A stretch of 64,000 bases of DNA from Marsupella aquatica (GCA_973895155.1 OZ316899.1:1077573-1141572), one strand, 5' to 3'; shown: positions 9,628 to 54,433, numbered from the stretch's first letter. The notes: generated by a model not told the origin, from the letters alone. Translations and numbers: made by a program.

Positions 9628-9726
9628 TGGGGGCCAATCGTTTGCAGGGCACCAGTTCTTCAGTTCATGCGCCAGCTTCGACCCCAGTTCTCTCGCTCAG
9701 CCTTAGTCGCCTTCTATCTCCTCTGA

Positions 9727-12236: not shown

Positions 12237-12261
12237 AACACGATTTTGGACCGACCAAGAA
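12237..12261 (+). repeat. Left TIR AACACGATTTTGGACCGACCAAGAA
   Basis: Reverse complement of 54409-54433 is AACACGATTTCCGACCGAACAAGAA (3 mismatches). Confidence 0.88.
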
Positions 12262-12483
12262 GTGTGACACACTTCTCGTTTGGCCCGATTCCATTTTTTT
12301 TCTAAGGCAATGCAATCTCCGATAAAACTGCCGAAAAATTAAAAAAACACGAGTTGCCTACATTGTATCGCCGCGGGAATGCAGGGAGCGATACGTGCAT
12401 TGGGTTTTACATTTGGTCTGTGAAAAAGTCCAAACTGGAAGTAACTTGGTCCAAAACCACGTAATCAAGGGTCAACCATGCAC

Positions 12484-12539
12484 TAACCCGGGTTAAGGTG
12501 GAAAGTAACCATGGTTAAGGGGGAAAGTCACCATGGTTA
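12484..12539. promoter_or_regulatory. Three 12-bp TAACCNNGGTTA palindromes at a 22-bp period, just upstream of a TATATAAA (12550-12557)
   Basis: TAACCCGGGTTA 12484, TAACCATGGTTA 12506, TCACCATGGTTA 12528. Confidence 0.5.
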
Positions 12540-12814
12540 GAGCATCCCCTATATAAAGAGGAGCGAGCTGCCCATAAAAAGTTTGTTTTTGCCGGAGCGA
12601 ACAACACCTCACTCAGAGTGAATACTGAACTCCTATCAAGTCTTTCATTCCTCCCAAGAGACTTGACTCTTTCTCCAGAGAACCCAATAAATTTATCGGA
12701 ACTACCATTCCAGTCGAGTATCATCCATGTAAGGTTGACTTGTCATTTGGTGTCAATGTCCTGGTCCAAGAGGACTGCAATAAATTTATCATTCATTCCA
12801 TAAATTATATTCAA

Positions 12815-13150
12815 GGTCCAATAAATTTATCGGAGTATCCATTCCTGTCATTGATTGAAGATTGCTTGAGACTCCGATAAATTTATTGCACTTTCCATTC
12901 CTGTGATTGATTGAAGGTTGCTTGAGACTCCGATAAATTATCGGAGTTTCCATTCCAGTGATTGATTGAGGATTGCTTGAGACTCCGATAAATTTATCGG
13001 AGTATCCAATCCCTGTGATTGATTGAAGATTGCTTGAGACTCCGATAAATTTATTGGACTTTCCATTCCAGTGATTGATTTAGGATTGCTTGAGACTCCG
13101 ATAAATTTATCGAAGTTTCCATTCTTGTGATTGATTGAAGATTGCTTGAG
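12815..13150 (+). repeat. ~56-bp subterminal tandem repeat x6, each unit carrying a CGATAAATTTATCG-type palindrome
   Basis: GAGACTCCGATAAATTT recurs at 12868, 12924, 12979, 13036, 13092. Confidence 0.92.
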
Positions 13151-13337
13151 TGTGTGAGGGAGTAATGTCTTCAAGATGAATGCGAGGTGCGATAAAGTTA
13201 TCGCACCCTCCTGTGAGACTCATCTTCCTCTGTTTTGTTTGGAGACTCATCTTCCTCTATGATGTCGTAGTGCTGCAGGGTTTAGGAGGCACAACAAAAG
13301 GTCGATTGCACTCGGTGGATCAAAGGTATAGTGACAA

Positions 13338-13808: not shown

Positions 13809-14166
13809 TGTGACGCTGCCGGTATGGCGGTTAATGAGTGATTCAGTCTAACTGCGCTCGGCACACGCGTTAGGTGGGTCTTAGGCCGCTATTATTAGCA
13901 TAACGACAGTATTTAGGTAATCATTAGGGGTAGGACATCATTAGGCAATAAGGGGGACTTCAGGTTCGGGCTGGCGGCGGGTCGCTATTCGCACACCCGG
14001 GTTACGAGCGTGGAGGGGCCCCTCCCTCGGGTCCGTATAACAAACTTAAGGAAGCGGCCACTGACGCACGCTGACTCAGACCGGCGGAGTGGCCGGTACA
14101 CCACAAGCGTGAGCGGTTCAACCTATGGGCGTCGAGGAGACGTCGGGGATCAACAAGCCCTCAAAG

Positions 14167-14173
14167 TATAAAA
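14167..14173 (+). promoter_or_regulatory. LTR TATA box (also 24260-24266)
   Basis: GTATAAAAGGGG, conserved in the family A' LTR at 9621. Confidence 0.65.
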
Positions 14174-14274
14174 GGGGAGCCAACCCTTTGTAGTGCACCA
14201 GTCCATCAGTCCGCGCGCCAGCTTCGACCCCAGCTCTCTCGTTCTCTCTAGGTCGCCACTACTATCTCCTTTGA

Positions 14275-16922
14275 ATGTCGCACACGATCCTCTCCAGCTC
14301 GGCCATTCGATTCTGGACGCAGTTCCTATCTACCGGAAGGCACTTGGCCGATTCATTGAAACACGCCAACCCGCGCCGATACGAGATCGAACGCGAATAC
14401 GAGAGAGCCATCCGCCTAGCAGGACGACACCACTACGTCCTTAACTTTGACTACCCATCTCAGAGCGAGCTTTACCGACCAGCTGAGGTATCTGGGTACT
14501 TCTTCAACGGAGACAAATATATCGGGTTCTGGGAAGCATTGCTTCGGCTTCCGGACGAGGTCTTCAATATCCCGGGTACAATCGACCTGCAGCGACATCA
14601 CTTCGACCACATCCCTGCCCAGGTTCGGGCTGTCATTAACGGCAAGTCCAGTACCAACCGTTCGACAAGGGCGTCCGCACTCGCTTCGGAGAACTTCTAC
14701 CAGCACCTGCAGAGCTTCATGGGAACTCGACCATCAACCAACATGACCAACCAGCCGGACCTGTACCCGTACCCGTACCCGTGCCCATGCAACCCCAGCC
14801 TCAACTTCAGCTTCAGCCTCAGCCGCAGCCTAGCCAAACCCCACCACCTATCACCCAGCCAGCACAGGTACGCTCCGTCATCAACGCTGTGGATCTTAGC
14901 GATGACGACGAGGCTACCCCACCCTTGACCAGGCGGCCCAGAGGAACAAGCGCGCGGAGGGCCGACACTATATCGTCCCCACCCCCTGCTCTGACCCCAG
15001 GAGCGGCCCCAGCAGACAACATAGTGACCGTGGCCGCCCCGGGCCCGTTACCAACCGCAGTGGCACTCCCCAGGCCCGATCGGGAGGATGGGGAAGTATC
15101 ACCTTCCCCGAGTCAGTCACGAGGAAAGAAGAGGAAGGAATCCGCCACTGCATCCGGGTTACCGTTGGCCACGGTAGCCGTAGCCAAGGTGACGATGCAT
15201 CGCATGGGGGAAAACGTTCATAGCAACATCCTCCATCCCAAGCATGCGGTGTACCTGAAGACTCAGGGATTTGAGCACCTCACCTCTCTCCCCTGGAACA
15301 CTTGCAGGTACTACGGGGAGGACATGACAGAATTCGTCAAGAATTATGACGACGTACGTCAACAGACTCGGCTGCGGGGAAGGAATATGTCCCTCACAGA
15401 AGAACGGCTCAAGATGATCTTCGGGTTACCCGAAGGTGACCATCGAGTCGAATCACGGGCTCCCGGGGGCAAGGGGGCCAAGTACCAATCTTCAAGTTTT
15501 CCCTCAGAGGGATCAGTAGACAACGGGTTCATGATGAGGACCTGCCTCATGCCCGAGATAGCTGAGCGGCTGGAGTTCCAGAGGTATGCTCTCCACATGA
15601 TGGAACCCCGGGGGGAGATCTCCGCCGCCCAGGTTATCCAGGTCGAGAACTATCGACCTAGGAAATGGGCGTCGTACTTCGCTAAGAAATTCCATGAAGA
15701 GATGGAGCGGCGAAGGAAGACGCTGTACATTGGCGGGAAGGCGTATTTCGCTAGCCATATCGAAATCATTCTTGAGTGGTACGCCCGGTTTGATCGACGA
15801 ACCCTTCCCCGCATCAACGTTACAAAGCTGGTCCCAGCTAGGTGGGTTTTTCCGGCATTGGAGAGACGGCCCCAACCCGAGGCCCGAAGTCCAGTGGACA
15901 CGCCAGCTTCACCCACCCCACCTCCACAAATAGCTGTAATCGTAACCGAGGAGGCGCCGGAGGGGTCGGTCGTCGCAACCGTTGATGCGACCCAACTAGC
16001 CGGGCTAAGTACAGAAGTTGGTACGGCAGAGGTCTTACCCGAACCCGGGTCTCCCAAGGACCCGCCGGTGGCAATTCCGGAGAACCGGACATTGCTGCAG
16101 GAGGACACTCCAGCCCCTTCCAACGTTATGTCCCCAGGGCTGGACGTCACTGCCCCGGCCCCTGCGCGTGTTGATGTCTGCCCGTGCCCAAATCCGGACA
16201 GGCACAACTTGGACCACCCGGAACTCTTCGTACAGGGTACGTTTCTGAACGGGCTTCTGGGAGATTTCTCTCATCAAATTGCCCAGGATACCGGGGAGTT
16301 CATGGCCCGGAAGGTAGCCTGTTTCTTCAATCAGGAGTTGGTTGCTGCCGTAAAGGCAGGTCGGGCCCAGTCGGAGGCCCTTCAGAGGATAGAGCGGTAC
16401 CGGGTGGAGTCCGTGTACCTAAAGAACGAAGTGGCGGCTCAAGAGGCTGAGCTTCTGCAACTACGACCCAAGGTTGCAGCCGCCGATGAGTTGTTAGCAA
16501 AGGCGTACGCTCTTACCGCCCTAGCCGAACAGGCCAAAGCTGGGAACGAGGCCGAGATTACACGACTCCGGAACCAGATTGACAATTTGAAGAAACAAGC
16601 TGTCACCTGGCAGAAAGACCTGGAGGAGGCCGAGGAGCGAGCCCAGCGGGACGCGACGGAGATAGCCACGCTGCAGGCCGAGATGGCGCGGCTCCAAACC
16701 GAGGCCGAGAAGCAGGACCAGCTGGCGAGTAAACTGACGAGCGACGCCCAGCAGCTGGAGGAGGCATGTCAGGAGGCAGCAGAGGAGACGGACGCGGCGA
16801 GGCGAGAGAACGAATCTCTGCTGGACCAGGTCCAGCTCCTCAAAGCGGACAATGACAGGCTTCGAAGGCAGCGGGATGGCCGTTCCCATTCGGGCGGCTC
16901 TGGCAAGCGTGCCAGGCATTAG
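14275..16922 (+). CDS. LTR-borne ORF, 5' LTR copy; consensus 882 aa, split here by one 1-nt deletion at ~14751
   Basis: ORFs 14275-14928 and 14781-16922 join if the T present at 24838 in the 3' LTR is restored. Has NLS-like RGKKRK and KRARH, a central ATHILA-ORF1-like domain and a C-terminal coiled coil. Confidence 0.85.
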
Positions 16923-17838
16923 CGGCGGAGTAGGAATAGATTAGGATTAGGATTGGCTTAGTCAGGCTCTTGGGACAGGCACCTGCCTTAGGTACAGCAG
17001 CGCTGCCCTGCTGTCTAGCCTGCGTAGATTAGGATCTTCTAATAAGACACAGCCGTTTTCCGGCCTGACTGTCAGCTTAGTTAGGACCTTAGTCAGCGAA
17101 TCTTCGGCGAGAGGACACCCCGTTCCTCGGCTCTTAGTATTTAGTGCACCCCTCGGTAGAGGCAAGGGGGGGGGGGGGGTTTTAGTTTCAGAGTCGAACA
17201 TCCGCGGGACATGCGGGGAGTCCCGACCTCTGGGAATGACAGAGTACCAAGGGGAGGGGGTAGGACTAAGCTCACCGGGCGAGTGCGGAGCCGGGCTCCG
17301 TTGTAGTGTGCACCCTCGGCCTTGAACCTGTGCATTCCAGGGCTGTCGTGTCAACTAAGTGTACGCATATGTTCCCTTTGTAGTAAAATCCTTTCCCATC
17401 ATTTTCCTTCGTGTAAATCGAGATTGTATGCATGTGTGCGCATATGTGTGTGGGCTTCTCGTATATGGGTGGCAGCGCCAGGCCGAACGCACTACCCGAG
17501 ACGTGCACAGGGTGCAGCCTGCGGGTAAGTGGTTGCAAGCACGGGTTGAGGACCTGTATCATCGAATCCGGATCGAAGGCGGACAGCACGAAGGCTTAGA
17601 AGCCCTTAAGCCGGGGTCGATCCTGCTATCGACTAAGGTACGTTCCGGCGGCGGAACACAAACCATACCTAGGAGGTGTCCGTATTTAGCAGTATGCGCA
17701 CTTAGCGCTAGTTTACGAGAATAAGGTGCATTACGTGCTTCCCTTCCTGCCCGAACCCTCAGATTTACGAGGGATGTGCCCGTCTAAGCTGAAGTCTGAG
17801 TTAAGGCCAAAGCCTACGACGTGACATAGCCTTTGTTT

Positions 17839-17856
17839 TGGCGCTAGATGGAGGGG
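17839..17856 (+). other. Primer binding site, tRNA-Asn(GUU) type
   Basis: TGGCGCTAGATGGAGGGG versus TGGCGCTAGAAGGAGGGG expected from the angiosperm tRNA-Asn 3' end as I recall it (17/18). Lies 12 nt after the LTR end. Confidence 0.75.
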
Positions 17857-17949
17857 GCACTCTACATATCGTAGAGGGGAGACATGTGCGTATTCACCTA
17901 GGCAGGATACATCAGGACGTAGTACTAACCATTGCATTTATATGAGTAA

Positions 17950-20900
17950 ATGCCCGTCACTCGTTCTCAAGCAGCTTACTTGAGGAGATTGACCAGCGAA
18001 CGAGAAAGTGCAACCACAACAAGCTCCGACTCGTCGGGCTCGGAGGACTCGCAATCGTCCCGACGTATGAACATACCCCCGGGATCTTCGGGGTCCGGTT
18101 CGACCGGCCCTGCTGCGGTTCCACCACCACCACCACCTATGGCAGCCGCTCCACCGGTGGCCCGCGCTGCTCAGGCGCCTCCACAAATATCGCAACGATT
18201 GCGATTTCATTATCGACCTTTCAAAGGGCGTCATGGGGATGATCCGGATGAATGGTTGGATGAGTTTGAAGCCACTGCTAAAGCTAATGGGGAAGACGCC
18301 ATTAAGCTAACCGTCCTCCCGGGAGTGATGCGGGGAGAAGCTCGTCCATGGTACAACTCGTTACCACCCGGGACTACCTGGGCACAATTCCAAGCTGCAT
18401 TGCTGCAGGAGTTTCGTGCCATTGGATCAGAACAACATTCTCTATTAAAGATTGGCCAGCTTCGCATGGGAAAAAAAGAGTCCCTGCGGAAATTCATTCA
18501 GAAGTTTCAGAAACTTGCGGCCAAGATCCGGCCCAGGCCAGGAGACACGCTCCAGCTTACATGGTTCCTTCATGATTTGCCCACGAATATGCAATTCTGG
18601 GTACGCCAGAATAATCCAATTTCAATGCAGGCGGCCATAGCGTGCGCCGAAACTTACCGGGAGTCCACCTATAACTCCCGGCGGAGCCAGCGAGCACGCC
18701 GCAGGAAGGGTAAGTACGAAACCTTCAGTGACAGTGACTCCAAATCGGACGACGAGAGGAAGAAGAAACGCAAGAAGAAGAAGAAACATTGTTCGACCTC
18801 GTCCAGCTCCGAGACGGAATCCAGTTCGGATTCAGCTTCAAGCATCGGATCCTCTACCTCCAGTTCATCAGGAAGTGACTTGGAGAGCGAAAGCCGGAGC
18901 AAAAAGAAGAAGAGACGAGTGAAGGAGGGGAAGATTAAACCCCGGGCGCGAAGAACGATACCAGATCCAAAGGCTGCCGAAGCAGACAAGCTGAACGAAA
19001 TCACGGATCGACTCAAAGCACTGTCAGTACATCTTGCAGAAAAGCCGGTGGAGAAGAAGAAGCCATTTGAGATTCGAACCCATGCGTGGTGTTCAAAGTG
19101 CTTCCAATCCGGCCATGTGGTGCAGGAATGCCCAAGGTGGAAGAACCGAGTTCACCAAGTAGAGCTGGATGATGTTGACAACCCGGGCCCCAAATCGGAG
19201 TCCACGGAGTATTTCTTTGAGGACCCTCCTGATTCCGTGTACCAGATTTCAACGGTAGGTCCGCGTAATTTAGCGGGTAGAACTGCGTACCCCTACCCAA
19301 GTAATGGCCAGAGTTTCCAGGTTATCAGTAACCCGAGCATCCCTCCTAAGCCAGGGATTTGGCGGTCCCCGGTTTGTTACAACTGTGAAAAGCCAGGACA
19401 CTTTGCGAGGGAATGCACCGAACCAAGACGTCAGGGAGATGGCCGAGGCACCCCACTATGTCAAGTTTGCAAAACGGAGGCTCATTCCACGGCCAACTGC
19501 CCGTTGGTAATCGTTGCTCGAACGAGTGCGGCTAGACCGGCCCAGGCTGGACCAGTCACGAGCGATGCAGTCGTCCAAATGATTGCTGTAGAATGGCAAG
19601 ATGACAACACCGAGTGGGTGAATCTGGTGGACGTGGCGGAACACCCTAATCCATTGGATGAGGCCGAGTGCTACCGAGTGTCGACAAGGGCCGAACGGAA
19701 GGAAGAAAAGACGGAGGAGAAACGGAGGAAAAAGCAAGATACTACTCCGGTGCAGCCAGCGATAAATATACCCCCAAAAAAGGACGATGACTACCAAAGG
19801 GACGACCCGAAGCTGTTTTTCCCCCGCATCGAAGAATTGGTAAAGAAACAGCTGGAGGCTTACGAAGCTCGGGAATACCAGAAGGCAATCGATAAGGACA
19901 TCAAAGCAGCCGAGACAGCCCGGCGTCAGGAGCAAGAAAAGCAAGATAAACAAGAGGAAGCCAAGCAGCAGCCAACGAAAGAAACAAAGGAGGACTATGA
20001 TATTAAGGAGGACGTGAAGAGTTGCCCGGTTACAGCGACGGTGGGGCAACTGCTGCAAAACAACCCACAGTACAGACGACAACTGAGGGAGTTGCTCATG
20101 GGTCGCCGAAGGAGGAGACTACCCCGAGTTGGGAGTGCGGACTGCAACATGATATGCGAGGACCTTGGAGCGCCGGACATCTCGATCGAAATTAATAACT
20201 GTACCATCAAGATGGTTCTTGTAGACGGAGGAGCGGGAGTCAACATCATGACTGAAGAAACGTCAGTCAAGTTAGGATACCTCACGTATCAACCCACGGC
20301 CCGAGCTATCAGATTAGCAAACGGGGCAAGGGTCCTCCCATTAGGCACGCTCACACGAGTGCTCACTCTGGTGGGAGGGGTAGAGTTCTATCTCAACTTC
20401 TTAGTCATGAGGCCGGTTCGTCCCTCCTCTTATCCGGTTCTTCTGGGCAGGCCGTGGTTGTACGGTGGCCGCGTAGTCACGGATTGGGGAAAAAAGGAGC
20501 TACGGTTCGGGGAACCCACCGTACGGGTATCCTGGGCAATGGACGATTATCAGGGAGAAACCCCACAAGGACCCGAGGAATATGATTCGGAGACCTCGGA
20601 GGAAGAGGAACTCAATATGATCGAACTCATCTCGTCCCTATCCGAGGAAGATGTCTTCGGAGTTGAAGCAACCCGAGAAACACATCTCCTAAATTACCCG
20701 AGGGCTGCCATTGAGTCCACCCCAAGTACATCTACTGTCGGGGATGAGGAAACGCACGAACAACTCGTCGAGACGGAGGACACGGCTCCAGCTAAGCAGG
20801 GAGCCGAGCCTACTCCTTCCATTTCAGAGCCTCGTAACCATGAACCAGCCCAACAACCGCCTGAGGCCGAAAACTCGAGACCGAGACATAAAAAGCGAGT

Positions 20901-37822: not shown

Positions 37823-38830
37823 AACCCAAACGCCACCATCACAAAACTGAAATTTTGTTTGTTTTGTATCTATTGGACATAAGAGTGATTGCTACAAATG
37901 GCTATGTCCAATTTATGTTTTATGCATGACACCATGCCATCTTAATATACTATAACAAATTCATCTATTTTATATCCGTATGATGTCTATGCAATGCTGA
38001 AAGTTTATTTAATTACATTATGAAACATATATACTTTTGATGTAGATTTGCTATTGACATTTTAATTTATTTGATATAAACCTTATGTTCCATCTATAAT
38101 TGGTGTGTAAACTACACATATATAACTATCATAAATTTTCGACCAAATAAGCTTAAAAAACTTTTGAATTCAAAAACTTTGGAGGAAATATTTAACCAAA
38201 ATAAGCAGTGAAAGATTTCCACAAAATTTTCATAGATATTAAAGTAAGGAGAAAGGGAAAACTTTATTTCAATAAACTTTGTTCCTCTAAACTACATAGT
38301 ATTTCGTAGAGTAGTGCTTTGTCAGCCAGTTTTGTTTGACTGTTTCTAGAGATAACCTAATTCCATTAAAGTGTCAACATGTGAGATACCACAGCCGGTT
38401 GGAGACATTCACCGGTGGTAACCTTTGAAAGACCTCATTGCCAGAACATATTTGCAACTAACTACCCTTTTGCTCAGTCTGAAGACAAAAAATTGTCAGC
38501 TGGTACATGCCGCTCCACAGAAACCTCAACATGAGCATATTCATCTATTCGAAGGCCAACAGCAAAAGCTGCTGCACGGCTCTTTCCTATCTCTTGCACA
38601 GAAAGAGGACTGGCCTTGAGTTGCTTCTTGATGCTAACTCCATCCTGTGAACCCAACAATTATGTGAGAAAAGCAAATCACACATGAAGACTCAATTACC
38701 TCTCCTGTCAAATGAATCCAGATCAAAAATTATCAACAGCATACACCTGGCAGGCTGACTCAAAACACAAATAAACAGAAGCGATATATAAAGGCTACAA
38801 GATATAGTACCTGCATTGCATGGTCCACCA

Positions 38831-41800: not shown

Positions 41801-41925
41801 TTAGCCCTTTGCACAGCTCTCTGTTTTGCTAAGCAAAGTCCATTTCGTCCTTGGTGGGTCCGCAAAGCTGTATAATCCAGAAATCCCAAAGCTCCACAAA
41901 AATTACACTTAAAGTTTGAAGCCAT
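38831..41925 (-). CDS. Plavaka-type (CACTA/CMC-related) transposase with N-terminal C2H2 finger, 4 exons, apparently intact (~900 aa)
   Basis: CNFC...LRTHQ finger; APIILYSDQT, WPLVMTIGNI, LYICDQTEG, CSCCFC, LDGLHQSILGVFK, FNIVKVHAMSH, EYDTGIFEHLH motifs. GT-AG introns 40880-41021, 40377-40490 and ~39497-39626 all keep the frame. Confidence 0.85.
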
Positions 41926-44519: not shown

Positions 44520-44890
44520 ACTGAGGGCACAGAGGAGACCGAAATTATCTGGCAATACTTGTAATGCTTCGCAGCGATTCAAATGGAGGTCTTGCAGGGT
44601 AGAGAGAAGACCAAAGCTCTCAGGCAATCTTTTGAGCCGTCGACACTCTAGCACCAAACGTGTGAGTGAAGGTAACTTTCCAAAGTCATCGGGCAGCACT
44701 TGTAGCTTATCGGCACCATATATTCTCAACGTCGTCAGAGCCTTAAATTGGCCAAACTTTCCCGACAGTGTCTTTAGTTCTGTGCAGAAATCCAGCACAA
44801 GTTCTTCCAAGGACCAAAGAAGGCCAAAACATGCAAGCGCCGCTTCTAGACTCGTGCAGCTATTTAAGAGTAAGAAGATTCTGTAAACGA
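44520..44890 (-). pseudogene. Plant NLR-type leucine-rich-repeat fragment
   Basis: Four to five ~24-aa repeats: LEELVLDFCTELKTLSGKFGQF, LTTLRIYGADKLQVLPDDFGKL, LTRLVLECRRLKRLPESFGLL, LQDLHLNRCEALQVLPDNFGLL. No NB-ARC seen. Confidence 0.8.
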
Positions 44891-45299
44891 CGTCTCCTTC
44901 TTCAAAATCCTGAAAGCTGCTGCATCTTTAAATGGTCTTTGATCTTTGCAAGTCCCAGGATGTGCCTCCCACTTGAAAGGAATTGCAGCGCGGGGCTGGT
45001 GTTGCTTGAAGATGGTGAACAAATCATCATCCGCGAACCATGATAAGTTGCTGCTGCACAAGTTCTAAACTCACCGGCTCGTCCATTTTGACACTGCTCC
45101 TCCTTGTGCTGCATTTTTCCTTCCTCATCCTCGCAGCTTCTCCTCCTCCTCCTCCTCCTCCAGCCGACTTCCTCTCCACGTTGCCGTCGTCGTGCGGCCC
45201 TCAACTCCAATTCCCCTAAACTCCTTGCTTCGCCCCTTCCTCCTCCTCCCCCTCCCCCTCCTCCGACAAAGAGTGCAGCCCCGTCGGCCGCCCCCGACG

Positions 45300-45455
45300 G
45301 GCGTCTTGACATCTGGAAGGGCCATCTCGGGCATGAGCGACGAACTGCAGTCTTGACGTCCGGAAGGGCCGTCTTGACGTCCAGACGCTTGAAAATCAAC
45401 TTGTCGTCTTGACGTCCGGAAGGGCCGTCTTGACGTCCGGAAGAGCCTCTTTGAC
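45300..45455. repeat. 21-bp tandem/dispersed repeat GTCTTGACGTCCGGAAGGGCC
   Basis: About 5 copies between 45301 and 45455. Confidence 0.75.
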
Positions 45456-47168
45456 GTGCAAAAAGAGTGCAGGGAATAAATCTGCTTGTATAACACGTAG
45501 AGCATACTTTTAGATTTTCTACCTCCCGGTCAAGTGTTTTGAGCTCAAAATTGGTCCTTCGAGGGTCCTTGAAAGATTTTGATGCCAAAACGCTCTTGCA
45601 CAAATAGGCGAATGTGACAGTAGCAATCAGTGACAGTAGCTCGCTATTCGCTTTGAATTGTTTGCATGGCTAGATGGACAGTGGAATGCATGAGGGTTTT
45701 CATGCGGGAAGATGCGCTGAGACAGAGTAGATTACATTGTACGTGTGCTCTAAATGCGGGGGCAAATTGGACCACTCAAGATTCATTTAGAGTAGATCTC
45801 TTTGTCCGGTTGAAGAATCAGTCCGACGCCAATCTGTTTGTGTTCGGTGTCAAAAATGAATTCAAGGGTCCATCCAGGCAGGCAGAAGCTATTATTGCAA
45901 TGAACATCGGACTGCGTGGAGTTAGATTGTTGGAATGTTAGATTGTTCCTACTGTGGTTGCTCTGGCCGGGTGTATTCCAACTTGTGCGGCACACAAACC
46001 CTAAACCTTTGAGCAACTGGCACAAAACTGTTTTTGAGTATGGACGGTCTCAACTTGTATTCTAAGATTCTAAAGATCCTGGATGTCCTTCCCCTTTGTC
46101 CATCATGTCAATGTAATTTTTACACGCTGAGCATCTCCCATGATATTCCGAATTGCTCTTCCTGCATGCCTGATGCATGTGTCAATCTAGTGCCTGTTAA
46201 ACTTCTAATTAAAAAAAGTCTACAATAGTTGGTGGGCAAGATATTTAAGTTCACGCTAACCCGATTTTGCTTTGGCATGCAGGCATGACGGGGAAAGCTG
46301 ACATTGAAGGATCTGAAAAGCTGATGCACGTGTCCATTTAAAATAGTCCTATATTTTGCCTGCCCTACTATAGTGTCTACCCAGGAAAAACTTGAACGAT
46401 CCAGCAAGTGAACTGGAAATGATGCATTGGTATTGTTTTATATGATGCCCACCAGGCGACAGCTAGCCTGTGTGGGAGTTGAGAGTTTGACTGAAATCAG
46501 AATTCAGAAAAGAGAGGCTGCTGTCATCTATCCACGGTCGTGTAATAGTGAGAGGGAAGGCTATGAGGAGTGGACTGAGGATTTTGTACAGACAACCAGA
46601 GAATTGGGGGCATTCACCGAGCAACAAAAGGTTTAGCATGCAGGTATAAGCAAGAGCGAGAGAGGGGCATTTCATTTTGGCAGTGGAACCTGAAAAGATT
46701 CACTGTTAATTTTCACTCTACATGGACGTCTACAAAAGGAGATCAAAGACTGTGTTCATTTTCATAGTGATGGCACCAATGATGATGAGACTGGTAACTT
46801 GCCACAATCTTCTACAGCAATCTCAAATGGAGATCCGCACCGCAGAGAAAGATCCAGCATGCAATCTATTCTTTGCGGGACCTTTACTGCAAGGAATCAT
46901 TTTGCAAAGTGAAGGAGATAGATATAGTAGGTTCAGACCATATTGACCTTTATTTGATTTTCTGGATTTGCAACAGAGAATAACAACTAAAAAGAAAATG
47001 ACAGGTACGCAGAGTTTATCTGGTTTGTAACAGTAAGTAGATACAACTAAAGTAGGTCCACTATCTACTCGCAAATTATAGCTATCAACTGACTAGTTGT
47101 AAATTGTTGGCCTATTTTATTTTTCAGAAAAGCAACTTGTCAGGTTCATACATCAGCTTCTTGTCATA

Positions 47169-48364
47169 CTAAGCGTCAGGACACTTAATTGCTATGCGCT
47201 TCATATATGGCTCCCACTCAACAATTTTCTGCGACATTTCCTCCAACTCGCCTGCCAGAGTAAGTCTTTCGTTGCCCTGTAGATTCCGGTCCTCCATAGC
47301 CAAAGTCAGCACATAAAATATGAAAGCAGCCAGATCAAGAGACAGTGAAATTATGTCAGACGGGATATAGTGAACTCCGAAGATTGCCTTGGAAATGGCA
47401 GCATGCACTGCTAAAGAACCCCAAGGGTCCCATATTCCATCTGACTCAGAGGTTCTCCATGCGTCATTGTACGTGTGGACCTGTAGTTCTTTTATGAAAT
47501 ATTCTTTCTCCTGTAAAGTTGATCCTCTGTGATACTTCTTGACTCCCAATTGTTGCTACAGCTCATCTCTGAGACTCTGCAAAATAAAATAGTACTAGAA
47601 TTTTAGAACAATTATACAACATAAGGAGAGTGAATAGTATTTTACTTCTGATCTTGTTGAAGGCTTACCTTTGTGAGCGATCCTTTTCTCCTCCTCATTG
47701 CATCTTTCATGATTGCTTTGAAATTTGGTTGGCTGGTATTGTTGTTCCAGGCTCTAACAAATTCATCATGAGATTTCTTGTCTTCAATAGAAATTCCAAA
47801 TTCATGCAGCAATGCTTCTTGCTGAATATCCTCTGTAGGATAGAGTAGCTCTTTCTCCAAGAGCAGGTGGCTGACAACAGAGTTCGAAATTCTCTTCAAA
47901 ATTCTTGGGTTACAGTGAGCAGGCGGTTCTTCGCTATTCTTCAATGCACTTTGATTTGCTTTGAGTAAAAACTGAATAGTCTCTTGTGCTTGCTTGATCT
48001 CTCCCCTCAAAAGTTGAAGTTGTATCCGCTCGCCAGCATTTACCAATGACTTATGCCGTGTAACCTCCATGTGTGGAATCTCTGCATGCGCAGTGCTTGC
48101 CTCGGGCACCTGATCTGCTAGAAAAGTGCGTGGATTCCCAGAAGATGGCAATGTTGTTTGAAATGGCACCTGACCCTTTGAACAAGCACGTGCATCTCCA
48201 GAAGAATGTAACGGTGGGCTAGGGGAGCCCTCAGGATTTGTACTCTCAAGGGACCCTCGCTGACAGGAACTAGTTTGAGAGTTTCTAACAGTATTGACAA
48301 AAGTATCTCTCCCTAACTTTTTGCCACTATGAACAGTGTCTTGACTGAAGCTACGTTTCCTCAT
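47169..48364 (-). pseudogene. Two-exon gene of unknown function (coiled coil plus helical domain), one in-frame TAG
   Basis: Phase-0 intron 47577-47668 (GTAAG...TTTGCAG) joins ...KGSLTK to SLRDEL*QQLGVKK. Confidence 0.5.
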
Positions 48365-48566
48365 GATAGAAATCTTTTTTCAGCAGGTTGGGGAGGCGTG
48401 CCTGGACAGGAAGGAGGAGGAGACACAACTACTGGAGGAGGAGGGTCCGGATACAGATCCAAATCAATTATGTTGACTTGTCTCCCCTCTACTGCTCGTT
48501 GGATAAGCCAGGGGTCAGCCATTGAAAATAAGCCCAAAGTATTTCAAACTTACTTTATGGAATGGT

Positions 48567-48720
48567 GCAAGTGGCCTGGAGGCCATGGATCGACACTTCT
48601 GCAAGTGGCCTGGAGGCCATGGATCAATCGACGCTTCAGCAAGTGGCTTGGAGGCCAAGAATTGACACTTCAGCAAGTGGCCTAGAGCCATGGATTGACA
48701 CCGCAGCAACTGGCCCGCAC
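48567..48720. repeat. ~34-bp tandem repeat x4.5 (GCAAGTGGCCTGGAGGCCATGGAT...)
   Basis: Unit starts at 48567, 48601, 48639, 48673, 48706. Confidence 0.85.
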
Positions 48721-48966
48721 CATTGATCTTGATCTCACTTGGAAAATGTAATTATAAAGATCGTTGAAGTGTACTCTACTTGATTTGGAAAATGGCGCTA
48801 GCGCCCCAATTTTGAAATTGAGAATTCTTATTTTGTTCCGTGGCAGAGGGATTTCAATCGTGAATTGGTAAAGTGTCAATTAGCATCTTTCTTTGCTCCA
48901 TGCAGGCATTGTGATCCGTAGAGACTGCCATGGGTGGACATGATGCATTATCACAAGATGGAGAAC

Positions 48967-49925
48967 GGATGGCTCTGCGGTGTGGAAATGTAGAGCTGGG
49001 AACAAATTTTGTCTCTCGAATCTTAGACTGATTCGTCCACCTCGGAGCCTAGAGGAAGGCGCTCAATCATGGACTTCTTGGTTTGAATCCAATTTTCTTT
49101 TTTTGTCCGCTGTTGTTCTGAGAAAGTGGGAATCGGGGGTTTTTAGGAGAAGATGGCTTTGCGCTGTGGAAATATATGCAGAGGTGGGAAGTTCTTTCAC
49201 TTCTCAAATCTTAGACTAATCCGCTCGCCTCGAAGCTGAAAGGAAGGCGCTGAATCGTAGACTTCTTGGTTTGCTGAATCCAGTTTTTTCTTGATGTTCT
49301 GGGAAAGGGGAATTGGAGGATTTTTAGGAAAAGGATGGCTCTGGGGTGTGGAAATGCAGAGGTAGGAGAGAATTTCACTTCTCGAATCTTACACTGATTC
49401 GTTCGCCTCGGAGCTTAAAGGTAGCCGCTGAATCATGGACATCTTGGTTTGTGGAATCCTGTTTTCGCTTGCTATCCCCTGTTGTTTTGAAAATGGGGAA
49501 TTAGAGGATTCTTAGAAGGATGGCTCTACGTTGTGGAAATGCGGAGGTAGGAACGAGTTTCACTTCTTGAATAGATTTATCCGTTTGCATCGGAGCTTAG
49601 ATGAAGGCGCTGAATCATGGATTTCTTGGTTGTTGAATCCAGTTTTCTTTTGCTATCCCCTGTTGTTCTGAGAAAGGGGAAATCAAAGGATTTGTAGGAG
49701 AAGGATGGCTCTGGGGTGTGGAAATGCAGAGCTGGGGACAAATTTCACCTTAGACTGATCCGTTCGCCTCGGAGCGTAGAGGAAGGTGGTGAATCGTGGT
49801 CATCTTGGTTCGGTGAGATCCGTCCAGTTTTTTCTTTCGATTCACTGCTGCTTTGAGAAAGGAAATATCAGAGGATGTTTAGGGCAAGGATGACTGTGCT
49901 ATGGGGAAATGCAGAAATGGAAACT
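48967..49925. repeat. ~184-bp degenerate tandem repeat x5
   Basis: GGATGGCTCT..GTGGAAATG recurs at ~48967, 49150, 49333, 49518, 49703, 49887. Confidence 0.88.
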
Positions 49926-52900
49926 AGAGCAGCAGCTTCCACGATTTGGAGTCCCATCAAATAGTTCCGTTTCGCCAGGTGCTGCCCGAAATTCAACATG
50001 GATTGGAGTAGTTTGAGGAGGGGAATTTACAAAGGAACAGACAAAAGAACAGCTTGATTATTGAACTATTGTGACGCGCTATGCTCGATAGACTCTCCAC
50101 AATCTACGGAGCGCTTTCAACGAGCAACCCCTTCACCTGATTGCTGGAAACATAGATTTGAGGAGATGGTTTCCTCAGTCTGTATGTTGTCGAGCTGGTA
50201 GTGACTAGGGAATATCGCGTCATGGATCATCTTCGTAGTTCCAATATCAAGCTGCCTTTTGAATGCCTCTTCTGAATTCTCTGGAAACCCGATGAACTTT
50301 GTTCATGAAGTGAATTACACAACATTTTGTCACAAATTGACAAATGTTCACTTGCAAAAATGGCAGAACTATGCAAATAGAAGAGTCCACATCTCTCCCT
50401 CAAAGCACTCAAGGCTCAGCATAAAATGCGGAGATTGAGCTTGCTTCCTTAATCGAGAACGTTCCAGAATGATAGATCTAACAAGGTGACCACTTTTGGC
50501 ACGCAGAAACGTATTACTTATTTCAACCTAGCAGATTTCGTGAATTTGGATAACAGTCTTCCCTTCGTGCTTGAGACGTGGACGGTCCCAATCCTATTGG
50601 TTGGGAAGCTCGGAATTTTGCCCGCAGGGATGCAGAGATGCTCTTGCATGGAGAAACCTGTTTGTGGATCCAGTCACCGGACAGTGGTCAAGGATTTCAC
50701 CGAACATGATGCATTGTCACCTGAAGCATCTAGAAGGGGTGAAATTTGGACGATTTGGTCGCTCTTCCAGATGTAAATCTTCAATGCGGATGTAACCTCA
50801 CTCCAGAGATTTCCCCTAGTCCTGACCTATGCAAATCTTCAACTCAAGGTATTAATTTTTTGGTATTGAGCTGACAATTTATTCCTCTAGGGAAGGGTTG
50901 AATTCTGTAGCCGGAAAAAATTTCAGTATAGAGAGGGATATTGAATCGAATGAGCCCATAGGGTCCCTAGCTTGTCTCGATGCTATACTTCCAGCTTCAA
51001 TTGAACAGTTTTGTAGTGTCTGAAGTGACTCCTTGCTCGCCAAGGATCTCTAAGTTTTGAATAAAAGTTCCTGAGTGTTGTTTCCTGGCTCTTTTACTCA
51101 CGTACACGACAGTTTCCCATGTTTCAATCGCTGTTTTGTTTCAGGTTGATAAAGCTGCTGGCAGACAATGCCTCGGTGTTTGACACAAGGGGCACTGCAA
51201 AATGCAGGAGGAACGCCACAAAGCAAGTGCCAAGCATCTCCATCCACCCTCTTCTGCCGTTATGTTATATTCCAATACTTCCAATTCTATTATGAACATT
51301 TCGGGATGAATATTAAAGGACTCGTCTAGCTTGGCAAGCGTGAGAAAGGCCTCTCTTTGCCTCTCTAATGAAGCCAAATTCTTCTCTTGGAGCCGTTCTA
51401 TTCCACTCAAATGCGGTGGGTGGCTGAACCTTTGTGTGCAACGAATACGTTGAAGACTAATTTATCTCTTATGTCGCTGTCAGTTTAGTTGTTTCTCCTT
51501 CTGTTGCCAGGTTGTCTTCATTGGAACGTGTATGGTCCTCTCTTTTTGTCTGCGTCTGTTATGGTCTCCGCCATCTCTTTTGTTCTCCTCTACATCACCC
51601 TAGTGTCTTCTGGTGGGGCAGCCCGCGATTAGTGTTCTCGCTGTAGGTTTGAGTACCTCTCATCTGGCAACGTCCGTAGCGAGTTCAAAGGAAGAGACCT
51701 GATTTTCACCGTGCAGATTGAAATGATAGGCTACACTGCTTACGTCAAGGGATGCATTCCAGAAACAAAGAAGCCTTCTATCGCCGAGTAAAACTGTGAA
51801 AACAACATCCCAAGACATTAACAAAAGTTTTGACTAAATCAATTAAGATGAACTCTGAGACTTGTGATCTCCCCAAAAACCTAAGCTGAAAATTTGCCAC
51901 CAACTTTTCACAAGGCTAAGTCATCTCTACAATGATTCTAGCTCGATCTCAAAGACGTTACTAGGTTTTGCGGTCTACAATCTCCCCGGTGGCCCGATAA
52001 GGACCCATGACATCCTACACAATCCATAACAGGTACGCAACGACACCAAATCCAGAAAGCACAATAAAAATTGTTCCATTCAGAGGGATAGGGAATCAAT
52101 CCATCTGCTTAACAACTACTAATGTTTAGAGCTCAGAATTGCAGGGATAGAGACGAGGAAGGCATCCCGCTTGTGAAGCCCTTTATCAGGATCTCAAATT
52201 GTTAAAAAGTGTCTTGTACAAGACCGGGAAACTCAGATGTCAATCATGGGGAAAATCAAGGAACAAATAACTTTTAACTGTTTAACTCCAGTCACTGTGC
52301 CTGCTCTACCTTGCTCACAATGCCCTCCCGCCTTGATAACATGTGTTCAAGTATGACAACATTAAAAGAGGGTCGACGTGCTGCAATCATAGTAAAGTAA
52401 GAGCAAGAGATGTGTGGTACAATGAGCTGCATGCACAACCCAATAACTACTTCTTACCCATTATTAAGTCAATATTACTACATCATCTATATGCAATCTT
52501 TTTCTGTTTAATACATGGACATATGGTAGCAATCTATTGTTAATTTTTAATGTCTACCGGATATCTAACTGACGTTGGTTCAAGTACATGAACATTACAA
52601 TTAAGCCATGACATGTTTTTATGTAAAAGTTATGACTCATATGTGTCAATGGGATATGCAATCCAATTTACATCATAATCACATACAAACAATATCAACT
52701 TAGCATATTAAGCAGTTTGATACAAAATGATTGTCCAGTACACTCATAGAATTGACAAAGAAATCATGTACTAATACAACTTATGTCAAATACATATACA
52801 CCTCAGTTTCGTGATGACTAAGACCTCTCCTCGACACTTGGAGCCTCGAACCAATCACAATCCGCCCTGGAGAACTTGGAGAATCTGGAACTCTGAACGG

Positions 52901-53540
52901 TGAACTATTCACACGTGCAGTCCCAACGACTCCGCAAGCTGCAAGAAAATTGAGCACTTGTTGACCACAATTCCCACGGACCATTCGGGAAAGGGCCGAG
53001 TCTGGACTTCGTAATCCAATTCCCTCGCTTGCTCGCACGTCCAGTCTAGGCAATGCAACGACCGATCGCCGTATCGGTCTTTGTATTTCTGCCTCTTGAT
53101 CCTCACCCGGAGACTGAAAGATCCGTCATTGAACGTGTGTTGAATGTGGCAACTTGAATGCTGAGTGCGATACGCGTATCGGTTGCCAGATACCCTCTCC
53201 ATAACCCGGGATGGATGGCCTGAAGCGACATCTCGGACCTAAACCTGGGTTGTAATTTTCTCATTCCTTGGTGATGGAATGCTCAAGAGACGATGCTTCT
53301 CAGGTTTACTAGGCAACACATAGTAACAACTGGGCTCAAGACTAGAACTTGCATCAGAACTATCTGCTGTGAGAGAGGTAGAGCTTTAAGTATGCGACTT
53401 GGAAAACAGCGAGCGACAACATTAGGAGAGGATTCAACTGAACTTGAAGGTGAATCTGTGTCTGATTGAGACATGGCTATCCGAGACACTATGGGGCTTT
53501 ACATTCCTCCCTCAATCAGGGAAAATGAATGGCTCAATCT

Positions 53541-53830
53541 ATCTGATGTTGGTATTGCAAAAAGTGTTTCCTTCATATGGAAAGTTGCAATTTTGAAATT
53601 GCAACGATAAATTTATCTGATGTTGGTATTGCAAAAAGTGTTTCCTTCATATGGAAAGTTGCAGTTTTGAAATTGCAACGATAAATTTATCTGATGTTGG
53701 TATTGCAAAAAGTGTTTCCTTCATATGGAAAGTTTGCAATTTTGAAATTGCAGCGATAAATTTATCTGATGTTGGTATTGCAAAAAGTATTTTCTTAATA
53801 TGGATAGTTGTAATTTTGAAATTTAACCGA
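53541..53830. repeat. ~74-bp subterminal tandem repeat x4 with CGATAAATTTATC palindrome
   Basis: ATCTGATGTTGGTATTGCAAAAAG at 53541, 53615, 53689, 53764. Confidence 0.92.
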
Positions 53831-54408
53831 TGAACCAAAGGATCTTAGTATTGTCGGCAAGTATTTTTGTCGTCCGGAGTTGCCGCGATAATTTTATCGG
53901 ACTGCACATTGTTGTTGAGACAACGGCATGTTGACTATGCATGTATGTGGTTACTATGGTCAATTGCGGAGGTAACTGCAAGGTAAGTTTGACAAACTGT
54001 GCTGTAATTTCTTATCGATTGTGATGTAAAATAGTTATGGTAAATAACCAAAAATTGGGGAAATTGAGATTCGGTCGGAACTTTCATGGTTGAAATCCGC
54101 AGTCCGATACAGGTATCGGACTTTGTTTGAAAAGTGGATATGGATTTCTAGATAAGACGTTTCATATATGTTTGGAGAGCGTGGATATGAGGTTCTGGCG
54201 AACGTTTTTTGGATCTAATCTTTCCTTGATAAATTGAATGTTTGTGACCATTAATTTCAGTGGTTCGGACCATTCCTGAATTTCCTGATTCAATCCGAAC
54301 TCCGATACGGATTATATTATTTCCCCAAAAACCTGTTTTTGATTAAAAAACCATCGATTTGCGAGATTTGGCGGAAAATGAAAAAACACTTCTTGTTTGC
54401 GGAAATAG

Positions 54409-54433
54409 TTCTTGTTCGGTCGGAAATCGTGTT
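54409..54433 (-). repeat. Right TIR of the giant transposon
   Basis: Inverted copy of 12237-12261, followed by TGGA. Confidence 0.88.

What the first reader, a model, noticed from the sequence alone, without database searches (positions are those of the whole stretch)
12237..54433. Giant (42 kb; ~26 kb core) cargo-carrying TIR DNA transposon with an exact empty-site control in the same window
Seen: 25-bp TIRs (22/25) bound 42,197 bp inserted at AATCTCTGC-TGGA-CCAGG. Uninterrupted paralogous LTRs near 16822 and 57172 show a single TGGA, which confirms the duplication. The boundary is ambiguous by one base: a 4-bp TGGA TSD with AACACG ends, or a 2-bp GG TSD with AAACACG ends. Established: Sola elements make 4-bp TSDs, while CACTA/CMC-type elements make 2-3 bp TSDs. 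Inference: a ~26-kb plant cut-and-paste element carrying a DNA methyltransferase and other cargo is far larger than typical Sola elements and may be an undescribed family.
Basis: partly seen in the sequence, partly recalled or inferred. Interest (0 to 1): 0.85.

Follow-up and report, generated by a model that had tools for sequence, protein, structure and literature searches.

The report
Dead Sola1 transposon carrying DNA methylase
The 42-kb stretch is a real but dead cut-and-paste DNA transposon of the Sola1 kind. It sits inside a retrotransposon repeat of a probably bryophyte-like plant, carries a DNA-methylase gene and a second, unrelated transposase gene, and is swollen by two later retrotransposon insertions, so it is an interesting variant of a known kind rather than a new class.

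Summary
Two 25-bp inverted ends (22/25) at 12237 and 54433 bound 42,197 bp, flanked by TGGA. Three uninterrupted paralogous LTR copies in the window carry a single TGGA.

Two later insertions inflate the element: a full Ty3/Gypsy (13809-27909, TSD TCAAC) and a solo LTR (29646-31995, TSD GAGAC). The core is 25,736 bp.

The core holds three genes:
- a ParB-like/N6-N4 DNA-methylase fusion;
- a DUF7869 protein with an RNase H fold and a DDD motif, which matches a curated bivalve Sola1 transposase (hhalign E 2.8e-7);
- an apparently intact, intron-bearing Plavaka (CACTA-like) transposase gene.

A 16-bp palindrome, CCGATAAATTTATCGG, occurs 24 times. All copies lie inside the element, in both subterminal regions and around the methylase and DUF7869 genes.

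Two complete relatives in the liverwort Riccia sorocarpa (8.6 and 11.3 kb) carry the same gene pair, their own palindrome, RAC-type ends and no Plavaka gene. One has an unambiguous 4-bp duplication with empty sites. I therefore read this as a Sola1 element with a 4-bp TSD.

This copy is dead: the transposase has two frameshifts and a stop, and the methylase has a nonsense codon. Methylase-carrying Sola1 elements of 9-12 kb are already catalogued in red algae.

The parts
12233..12236 (.). Left copy of the target-site duplication, TGGA
   Evidence: paralogous LTRs have a single TGGA, and the BLAST alignments of the two flanks overlap by 4 bases.
12237..12261 (+). Left terminal inverted repeat, AACACGATTTTGGACCGACCAAGAA
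   Evidence: 22/25 complementary to the right end, with only two matches in the window.
12684..13204 (.). Left subterminal array of the 16-bp palindrome CCGATAAATTTATCGG (56-bp unit x6 at 12817-13150)
13809..27909 (+). Nested complete Ty3/Gypsy retrotransposon. Its LTRs (13809-17826 and 23902-27909) are 98.9% identical, its polyprotein ORF is 17950-23934, and its TSD is TCAAC. It is a later insertion, not part of the element.
28267..28501 (.). Palindrome cluster upstream of the ParB-methylase gene
28678..34365 (+). ParB-like/N6-N4 DNA methylase fusion gene, in one reading frame throughout once the solo LTR is removed. The ParB-like domain is at 32002-32787. The methylase part is at 32980-34365, with DIPY and DLCCGTG motifs. 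A TGA nonsense codon at 33994-33996 replaces a Trp codon that is intact in L001. Whether 28678-29523 belongs to the gene is likely but not shown.
29646..31995 (-). Nested solo LTR of a related Gypsy family (TSD GAGAC), inserted inside the ParB-methylase gene. It is a later insertion.
34469..34586 (.). Palindrome cluster between the 3' ends of the methylase and DUF7869 genes. The palindrome is also present at this position in relative L001.
34842..37891 (-). Sola1-type DDD transposase gene (Pfam DUF7869), inactivated by 1-bp deletions near 36113 and 35828 and a stop at 35328-35330. An 88-bp tandem array of the palindrome (36490-36824) lies inside what looks like an intron.
38831..41925 (-). Plavaka (CACTA/CMC-related) transposase gene with four exons, three introns with canonical GT..AG sites, and no disruption. 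No TIR or TSD of its own was found around it.
   Evidence: Negative TIR searches are.
41926..53535 (.). Internal DNA of unresolved origin with no palindromes. It contains a GC-richer island with an LRR-like ORF (44388-44927, minus strand) and a 188-bp tandem repeat (48960-49915).
53536..54119 (.). Right subterminal palindrome array (74-bp unit x3.9 at 53536-53823, plus further copies up to 54119)
54409..54433 (-). Right terminal inverted repeat (read on the minus strand: AACACGATTTCCGACCGAACAAGAA)
54434..54437 (.). Right copy of the target-site duplication, TGGA

Best explanation
This is a fossil copy of a Sola1-superfamily cut-and-paste DNA transposon. Its transposase is the DUF7869 protein, which has an RNase H fold and a DDD catalytic triad. 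The transposase recognised the ~25-bp inverted ends (5'-AACACG...) and made a 4-bp staggered cut in the target, giving the TGGA duplication inside the LTR of a Gypsy retrotransposon. As its standard cargo the element carries a ParB-like/N6-N4 DNA-methylase fusion gene. Arrays of one 16-bp palindrome occupy both subterminal regions and lie around and inside the two genes. These are most likely parS-like loading sites for the ParB domain, which would direct methylation to the element's own DNA; alternatively they are binding sites for the transposase. Shown: the ends, the TSD and empty sites, the nested insertions, the gene content, the folds, the homology to Sola1, and the same architecture in Riccia elements. 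Inferred: who binds the palindrome, that the methylase is a DNA adenine or cytosine-N4 methylase acting on the element, and what that achieves (self-marking or anti-silencing). The copy can no longer move by itself: the transposase has two frameshifts and a stop, the methylase has a nonsense codon and a solo-LTR insertion, and two retrotransposon insertions came later. It also contains an intact Plavaka transposase gene within a 15.6-kb internal segment that the Riccia relatives lack. This is most likely a passenger, either a nested Plavaka insertion whose ends I could not find or captured DNA.
For: The ends, the TSD and the paralogous empty sites are shown. The nested insertions with their own TSDs are shown. 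DUF7869 is detected at E 2e-37 in the window and 2e-50 in relative L001. The family alignment has invariant D61, D139 and D181. The AlphaFold model has pLDDT 84, and its Foldseek hits are RNase-H-fold enzymes: IstA transposase, a terminase nuclease, RNase HI and PFV integrase. A curated bivalve Sola1 catalytic exon matches the DUF7869 profile at hhalign probability 93%, E 2.8e-7, with the same 42-residue spacing between the second and third Asp and the same DNxxx(E/Q)NKN and H..xxIDxMF motifs. In Riccia sorocarpa, L005 holds an 11.3-kb element inserted in a satellite whose empty monomers show an unambiguous 4-bp TSD (GTAG); it has ~30-bp TIRs starting (G/A)ACAAC, the same ParB-methylase plus DUF7869 pair, at least 14 copies of its own palindrome, and no Plavaka gene. 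A second Riccia copy (L041, 8.6 kb) has the same content. The methylase-DUF7869 linkage also appears in L001, L004 and L042. The methylase is assigned because 9 of 10 long homologues, L001 and a Chara ORF all hit PF01555. The ParB-like fold is assigned because the top 25 Foldseek hits are ParB, Noc or KorB at probability 0.97-1.00. The palindrome occurs 24 times, all inside the element, against 0.2 expected. Red-algal Sola1 elements of 9-12 kb with a methylase gene next to the transposase are listed. Gene decay is shown.
Against: An intact Plavaka transposase gene lies inside, and the boundary can also be read as a 2-bp GG duplication, which is the TSD length of red-algal Plavaka elements. The Sola1 homology rests on my hand translation of one published consensus, and the alignment covers 59 columns. 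TIR similarity between the window and Riccia is limited to the first 4-5 bases. One Riccia copy (L041) shows a 5-bp rather than 4-bp flanking repeat. No second copy from the source genome was available, so the family's TSD length in this species rests on a single insertion. No Pfam hit to the methylase or ParB domain is obtained from the window's own broken ORFs; both assignments come from homologues and a fold prediction.
Confidence: 0.78

Rival explanations
1. It is a giant Plavaka (CACTA/CMC-related) transposon. On this reading the Plavaka protein is the working transposase, the duplication is the 2-bp GG with ends AAACACG...CGTGTTT, and the methylase, ParB and DUF7869 genes are accessory genes like PAG1-3 of red-algal giant Plavaka elements.
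For: The Plavaka gene is the only intact transposase gene in the element. Red-algal Plavaka elements are 14-20 kb, make 2-bp TSDs, and carry an N6-methylase gene, a ParB-like gene and inverted-repeat arrays. The boundary allows a 2-bp reading. No separate Plavaka ends were found inside.
Against: The ends do not resemble any reported Plavaka or CMC terminus (CGTCT, CACTG, CACAG, TGT or CATCA). Riccia elements that lack any Plavaka gene have matching RAC-type ends, the same gene pair, and a 4-bp TSD proven by empty sites. The palindrome that fills both subterminal regions recurs around the DUF7869 and methylase genes and is absent from the 15.6 kb around the Plavaka gene. DUF7869 is itself a DDD RNase-H-fold protein homologous to Sola1 transposase.
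Confidence: 0.1
2. It is a true two-transposase chimera that moves as a unit. The Sola1 ends are used, and the Plavaka gene has been recruited or retained under selection inside the element, rather than being a chance nested insertion.
For: The Plavaka gene has no disruption over ~3 kb of coding sequence, while the neighbouring Sola1 and methylase genes have at least four. No Plavaka ends were found. Logan assemblies from neighbouring SRA run accessions contain relatives of both gene sets at similar divergence: Plavaka at 79%, DUF7869 at 79% and the methylase at 70%.
Against: Only one copy was seen. Similar divergence is equally expected for two independent families diverging with their hosts. 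The Riccia, L004 and L042 relatives show no linked Plavaka gene. Short or degraded Plavaka ends (13 nt in some families) could escape my searches.
Confidence: 0.1
3. It is not one element. The two ends belong to different elements or are a chance inverted repeat, or the junctions are assembly artefacts.
For: Only one copy was seen, the region is extremely repeat-rich, and read data cannot be checked.
Against: The two flanks join exactly into one LTR with a 4-bp overlap against three paralogues. The TIR pattern has zero chance expectation. Both ends carry the same palindrome arrays as the internal genes.
Confidence: 0.02

Closest known systems
Repbase Sola1-1_CCri, Sola1-2C_CCri and Sola1-3_CCri (Chondrus crispus) and Sola1-1_KAPAL (Kappaphycus), as tabulated in Suppl. 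Table 6 of bioRxiv 10.1101/2025.02.11.637652
   Same: These are Sola1 transposons of 9-12.4 kb that carry an N6-adenine-type DNA-methylase gene (PAG2) next to the transposase gene. The Riccia relatives found here have the same two-gene layout and size (8.6-11.3 kb).
   Different: Here the methylase is fused to a ParB-like domain, and no SET domain was detected; in red algae ParB sits in a separate gene (PAG3) with a 2OG-oxygenase domain. The host is a streptophyte or bryophyte-like plant. This copy has a 25.7-kb core with an extra 15.6 kb that includes a Plavaka gene. I could not compare sequences with the Repbase entries.
Giant Plavaka elements of red algae (Plavaka-1 to -3_BOSMO, EnSpm-2C_CCri and others)
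   Same: They are large TIR transposons with a Plavaka transposase, an N6-methylase gene, a ParB-like gene and tandem inverted-repeat arrays thought to be bound by the ParB-like protein.
   Different: Those elements make 2-bp TSDs and have CGTCT, CACTG or CACAG termini. Here the ends are AACACG, relatives without Plavaka keep the same kind of ends and a 4-bp TSD, and the palindromes avoid the Plavaka region.
Animal Sola1 elements (curated bivalve consensus Sola1_A.kagoshimensis_23, PMC10294476)
   Same: The DDD catalytic core is homologous (hhalign E 2.8e-7), with the same spacing between the second and third Asp, and the ends start with GAC (RAC here).
   Different: The animal elements average ~5.4 kb, and no methylase cargo is reported for them.
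Bacterial and phage ParB-like/DNA-methylase fusion proteins and ParB/Noc/KorB parS-binding proteins (own knowledge plus the PDB fold hits)
   Same: They combine a ParB N-terminal plus helix-turn-helix fold with a PF01555-class methylase, and their cognate sites are 16-bp palindromes.
   Different: Here the fusion is encoded by a eukaryotic transposon, contains introns, and its presumed sites are arrayed within the transposon. Binding was not tested.

Membership tests
Sola1 (Sola superfamily of DNA transposons) | A DDD transposase with an RNase H-like fold, homologous to known Sola1 transposases | tested here: met
   D61, D139 and D181 are invariant in 27 DUF7869 proteins. Foldseek confirms the RNase-H fold. 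The curated bivalve Sola1 catalytic exon matches the DUF7869 profile at hhalign probability 93.3%, E 2.8e-7. Caveat: the Sola1 peptide was translated by hand from the published consensus, and the window's own gene is frameshifted.
Sola1 (Sola superfamily of DNA transposons) | A 4-bp target-site duplication | tested here: met
   In the window, TGGA is supported by three paralogous empty sites, but it can also be read as a 2-bp GG. The Riccia L005 relative has an unambiguous GTAG with empty satellite monomers. One Riccia copy (L041) shows a 5-bp repeat, GACAT.
Sola1 (Sola superfamily of DNA transposons) | Terminal inverted repeats with family-typical termini | tested here: inconclusive
   TIRs are present: 25 bp at 22/25. 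Termini are AACACG in the window, (G/A)ACAAC and AACAGC in Riccia, and GACGTT and GACTGC in the bivalve Sola1 consensus. They share only 5'-RAC, and I have no reference list of Sola1 termini.
Plavaka / CMC (CACTA-Mirage-Chapaev) transposons | A Plavaka/CMC DDE transposase encoded in the element | tested here: met
   PF18759 hits at 1.9e-21 and 7e-15. The gene is intact with three canonical introns.
Plavaka / CMC (CACTA-Mirage-Chapaev) transposons | A 2-3-bp TSD | tested here: inconclusive
   A GG reading is possible at this one insertion. Homologous elements without Plavaka give 4 bp.
Plavaka / CMC (CACTA-Mirage-Chapaev) transposons | Termini of the CA..TG type (CACTA, CACTG, CACAG, CGTCT, TGT..ACA or CATCA..TGATG) | tested here: not met
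   The ends are AACACG or AAACACG.
PAG accessory-gene cassette of red-algal transposons | PAG2: a PF01555 N6/N4 DNA methylase plus a SET domain | tested here: inconclusive
   The methylase part is met through homologues. No SET domain was detected in the window ORFs or in homologues. The source table notes that the SET domain is 'possibly degraded' in the Sola1 carriers.
PAG accessory-gene cassette of red-algal transposons | PAG3: a ParB-like DNA-binding domain plus a 2OG oxygenase, with adjacent inverted-repeat arrays | tested here: inconclusive
   The ParB-like fold is met and palindrome arrays are present. However, the ParB domain is fused to the methylase, and no oxygenase domain was found.

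The most novel reading that the evidence does not exclude
Land-plant and streptophyte Sola1 transposons may carry a self-addressed epigenetic module. A single ParB-like/DNA-methylase polypeptide would load on parS-like 16-23-bp palindromes that each family keeps in its own subterminal and intragenic arrays (a different palindrome in the window, in Riccia L005/L041 and in L040), and would methylate the transposon's own DNA. In this lineage the Sola1 element may additionally have become a vehicle for a second, still intact Plavaka transposase, that is, a two-transposase chimera.
Probability: 0.25. Interest if true: 0.7.

Novelty: new variant of a known kind. Interest (0 to 1): 0.45.

Why it matters
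Three things follow from this finding.

- **A function for DUF7869.** The Pfam domain of unknown function DUF7869 is multi-copy in liverworts, ferns and marine invertebrates. This work links it to the Sola1 DDD transposase.
- **Wider range for methylase-carrying Sola1 elements.** Until now these were tabulated only for red algae. Here they also appear in streptophytes (Riccia, and the source plant of this window), with the ParB-like domain and the methylase fused into one protein and with family-specific palindrome arrays at the element ends.
- **A testable idea.** Some eukaryotic transposons may mark their own DNA with a bacterial-type ParB/parS-plus-methylase module. That can now be tested with long-read 6mA/4mC calls and binding assays.

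The particular copy in the window is an immobile fossil and ordinary in that respect.

Tried and rejected
- **Nested Plavaka element.** I looked for its own TIRs and a 2-5-bp TSD around 38.8-42 kb using repeat finder, exhaustive 13- and 16-mer TIR+TSD scans, blastn-short and an 11-mer repeat census. Only chance-level pairs turned up, so the origin of the 37.9-53.5 kb segment stays open.
- **Source genome and extra copies.** An exact-protein look-up of the Gypsy polyprotein found nothing on record. The closest Plavaka relatives lie on contigs whose DNA could not be fetched.
- **Metagenome scans.** A scan for the TIR gave 0 hits. A scan for two spaced palindromes gave 33 loci, none of which shares any other similarity with the window, so they are chance or unrelated repeats.
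- **Direct Pfam and PDB sequence searches.** The window's own methylase and ParB ORFs gave nothing significant. The assignments had to come from homologues and a fold prediction.
- **Ends of other relatives.** None could be found for L004 or the Saccoglossus locus L006. L042 does not reach far enough upstream to show whether a Plavaka gene is linked.
- **Literature.** Bao et al. 2009 and Yuan & Wessler 2011 (the Sola definitions) are not held in the library. The statement 'Sola = DDD transposase plus 4-bp TSD' is therefore from my own knowledge.
- **Chara locus L002.** It is full of assembly gaps and gave no context.
- **A wrong first assumption.** I initially took ORF 37013-37891 for the C-terminus of the Plavaka protein. 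It is the N-terminal part of the DUF7869 protein.

Full report
**1. The observation.**

The left junction reads AATCTCTGC-TGGA|AACACGATTTTGGACCGACCAAGAA. The right junction reads TTCTTGTTCGGTCGGAAATCGTGTT|TGGA-CCAGG. The 25-bp ends are complementary at 22 of 25 positions. With the three variable positions masked, the pattern occurs exactly twice in 64 kb, once at each end in inverted orientation, against zero in 100 shuffles.

Self-BLAST shows that the flanks are the two halves of one ~4-kb LTR of a Ty3/Gypsy element (9263-12236 and 54434-55417). They align to three uninterrupted paralogous LTR copies, and the two alignments overlap by exactly the four bases TGGA (16822-16825, 26909-26912, 57172-57175). 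The empty sites are paralogues, not the allele. Even so, around the junction the copy at 16813-16840 is base-for-base the joined flanks.

**2. Anatomy.**

Two later insertions inflate the element.
- A complete Gypsy element lies at 13809-27909. Its 4.0-kb LTRs are 98.9% identical, it has TG..CA ends and TSD TCAAC, and its 1994-aa polyprotein has gag, protease, RT, RNase H and integrase domains.
- A solo LTR of a related family lies in reverse orientation at 29646-31995 with TSD GAGAC. I recognised it from its match to 58168-59792 and its TGTCACG...CGTCACA ends.

Removing both leaves a 25,736-bp core.

The core contains three genes.

(a) The first is a plus-strand gene, 28678-34365, that is in one frame throughout once the solo LTR is taken out.
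- Its middle part (32002-32787) carries a GGxH box conserved in homologues from Chara, Riccia and metagenomes.
- An AlphaFold model of this part (pLDDT 76) has ParB, Noc and KorB as its top 25 PDB matches, at probability 0.97-1.00.
- Its 3' part has the DIPY and DLCCGTG motifs of beta-class amino-methylases.
- The broken window ORFs give no Pfam hit. However, 9 of 10 long homologues, the 70%-identical L001 ORF and a 929-aa Chara ORF that contains both domains all hit PF01555 N6_N4_Mtase.

(b) The second is a minus-strand gene, 37891-34842, with Pfam DUF7869 (E 2e-37). Its N-terminal ORF (37013-37891) matches the N-terminus of full-length DUF7869 proteins.

(c) The third is a minus-strand Plavaka transposase gene, 41925-38831 (PF18759, E 1.9e-21 and 7e-15). 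It has four exons and canonical GT..AG introns and no disruption. Relatives are split at similar places.

A 16-bp palindrome, CCGATAAATTTATCGG (up to 3 mismatches allowed), occurs 24 times in the window against 0.2 expected. Every copy lies inside the element:
- in both subterminal regions (12684-13204 and 53604-54119);
- upstream of gene (a);
- in its presumed intron;
- between genes (a) and (b);
- in an 88-bp tandem array inside gene (b).

None lies between 36824 and 53603, the part that holds the Plavaka gene.

**3. What DUF7869 is.**

DUF7869 proteins are multi-copy in Riccia sorocarpa, in ferns and in marine invertebrates. An alignment of 27 of them has three invariant aspartates in the motifs DGMDQ, QLDN..ENKN and GHTH..IDQMF. 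The AlphaFold model (pLDDT 84) matches RNase-H-fold enzymes, including IstA transposase, a herpesvirus terminase nuclease, RNase HI and foamy-virus integrase.

A curated bivalve Sola1 consensus is printed in a supplement of PMC10294476. I translated its catalytic exon by hand and compared it with the DUF7869 profile. hhalign gives probability 93.3% and E 2.8e-7 over 59 columns. The spacing between the second and third Asp is 42 residues in both, and the DNxxx(E/Q)NKN and H..xxIDxMF motifs are shared.

Together with the DDD chemistry and the 4-bp TSD that define Sola (Bao et al. 2009, from my own knowledge; the paper is not held), this identifies DUF7869 as the Sola1 transposase core.

**4. Relatives settle the boundary.**

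In Riccia sorocarpa (L005), an 11.3-kb element lies in a ~575-bp satellite. Empty monomers read GCTCCGTAG|TCTAAAA. The junctions read CCGTAG|GACAACGGACAATCTGGAGTG... and ...CACTCCAGATTGTCTGTTGTT|GTAGTCTAAAA. That is an unambiguous 4-bp duplication with ~30-bp TIRs.

This element contains only the ParB-methylase gene and the DUF7869 gene, plus at least 14 copies of its own palindrome, ACGTCCATGA(A/G)TCTCATGGACGT. It has no Plavaka gene.

A second Riccia copy (L041, 5462-14035, 8.6 kb) has the same two genes and ends that start AACAGC. There the flanking repeat is 5 bp, GACAT.

The methylase-DUF7869 pair is also linked in L001, L004 and L042.

The window's ends (AACACG under the 4-bp reading) line up with these RAC-type ends. 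They do not resemble any Plavaka terminus reported by Kojima 2025 (TGT..ACA, CATCA..TGATG) or in the red-algal table (CGTCT, CACTG, CACAG, all with 2-bp TSDs). I therefore read the duplication as 4 bp and the element as Sola1.

**5. State of this copy.**

Relative to both L001 and L042, the DUF7869 gene has 1-bp deletions near 36113 and 35828, and an in-frame stop at 35328-35330. The methylase has TGA at 33994 where L001 has TGG (Trp); L042 independently has TAG at the same codon. The gene is also split by the solo LTR. The element is therefore a non-autonomous fossil, older than the two nested retrotransposon insertions.

**6. The Plavaka gene.**

The Plavaka gene is intact, while its neighbours have at least four disruptions. 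That suggests it arrived later or is under selection. I found no TIR/TSD pair around it, and no relative that links it to the Sola1 genes. The 15.6 kb between 37.9 and 53.5 kb is absent from the Riccia relatives and also holds an LRR-like ORF in a GC-richer island and a 188-bp tandem repeat. Its origin is unresolved: it could be a nested Plavaka element with short or degraded ends, captured DNA, or a true chimera.

**7. Comparison with what is known.**

Giant Plavaka elements with methylase and ParB-like accessory genes and inverted-repeat arrays are described in red algae (bioRxiv 10.1101/2025.02.11.637652). The same paper's Supplementary Table 6 lists Repbase Sola1 elements of Chondrus and Kappaphycus, 9-12.4 kb long, that carry the methylase gene next to the transposase. 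Plavaka has been noted in streptophyte algae and moss (PMC13519894).

The kind is therefore known. Three things appear new here:
- the streptophyte/bryophyte-like host range — the Gypsy polyprotein's best named relatives are Riccia (55%) and Marchantia (47%);
- the fusion of the ParB-like domain and the methylase into one protein;
- the family-specific palindromes in the subterminal regions, and the embedded second transposase gene.

**8. Mechanism (inferred).**

The Sola1 transposase binds the TIRs and integrates with a 4-bp stagger. The ParB-like domain probably loads on the palindrome arrays and brings the methylase to the element's own DNA.

One observation leaves an alternative open. A third Riccia DUF7869 locus (L040) has palindromes of its own but no methylase within 10 kb. 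The palindromes could therefore instead be transposase-binding subterminal repeats.

**9. Verdict.**

This is a real, well-delimited but dead Sola1 transposon with methylase cargo, and a new variant of a known kind. The 'undescribed giant family' reading is overstated.

Noticed in passing
window 14781-16922, 24805-27009 and 180-2375: The ~4-kb LTRs of the Gypsy elements contain a conserved ORF of ~715-730 aa with a coiled-coil C-terminus. The ORF at 180-2375 is a 28%-identical homologue (E 5e-45) although the DNA no longer aligns. The Sola1 element inserted inside this ORF, at the codons for ...ENESLLDQVQ.... A long protein-coding ORF inside an LTR is unusual.
   Followed up: partly
window 55417-58167 and 58168-59792: A 5'-truncated LTR copy abuts the end of the interrupted LTR directly. 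It is followed by a second, truncated copy of the reverse-oriented solo-LTR family that is also nested in the transposon at 29646-31995. This is a dense pile-up of related Gypsy LTRs.
   Followed up: partly
window 33994-33996; L042 3354-3356; L001 ~794-796: The same Trp codon of the methylase (TGG in L001) is TGA in the window and TAG in an independent metagenome relative. These are two separate G-to-A nonsense mutations at one codon.
   Followed up: partly
window 43700-45700: A GC-richer island inside the transposon contains an LRR-like ORF (44388-44927, minus strand; LRR_8 at E 8e-7, just above its Pfam gathering cutoff) and low-complexity CT-rich runs. It may be a captured host gene fragment.
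   Followed up: no
window 48960-49915: A tandem repeat of a ~188-bp unit (about 5 copies, 73% matches) of unknown meaning lies inside the transposon.
   Followed up: no
L005 2413-5172 (Riccia sorocarpa CM100798.1): A 1,381-bp tandem duplication, 100% identical, includes satellite flank plus the left end of the Riccia element, so the left TIR appears twice (3036 and 4415). It could be an assembly artefact or a real duplication.
   Followed up: no
L041 5462-14035 and 21960 (Riccia sorocarpa CM100797.1): The second Riccia copy is flanked by a 5-bp repeat (GACAT) rather than 4 bp. A further left end lies at 21960, and fragments homologous to L005's right part lie outside the element. This is a cluster of related copies.
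   Followed up: partly
L040 798-821, 9802-9872 and 13366-13514 (Riccia sorocarpa CM100796.1): A DUF7869 gene with no methylase within 10 kb is flanked by yet another palindrome, CACCCCATGCG(T/C)CGCATGGGGTG. Palindrome arrays therefore accompany the transposase even without the ParB-methylase gene.
   Followed up: no
L002 9998-11059 and 35701-38487 (Chara braunii BFEA01000570.1): Two ParB-like/methylase copies lie ~26 kb apart and are merged into one 1,825-aa gene model. The second is a single intact 929-aa ORF with both domains. No DUF7869 or Plavaka gene is nearby, but the locus is full of assembly gaps.
   Followed up: partly
L006 3900-4112 and 10001-17810 (Saccoglossus kowalevskii GL013216.1): A DUF7869 gene model in an acorn worm lies about 6 kb from a short ORF carrying the same ParB-type GGxH box. 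The pairing may therefore extend to animals.
   Followed up: no
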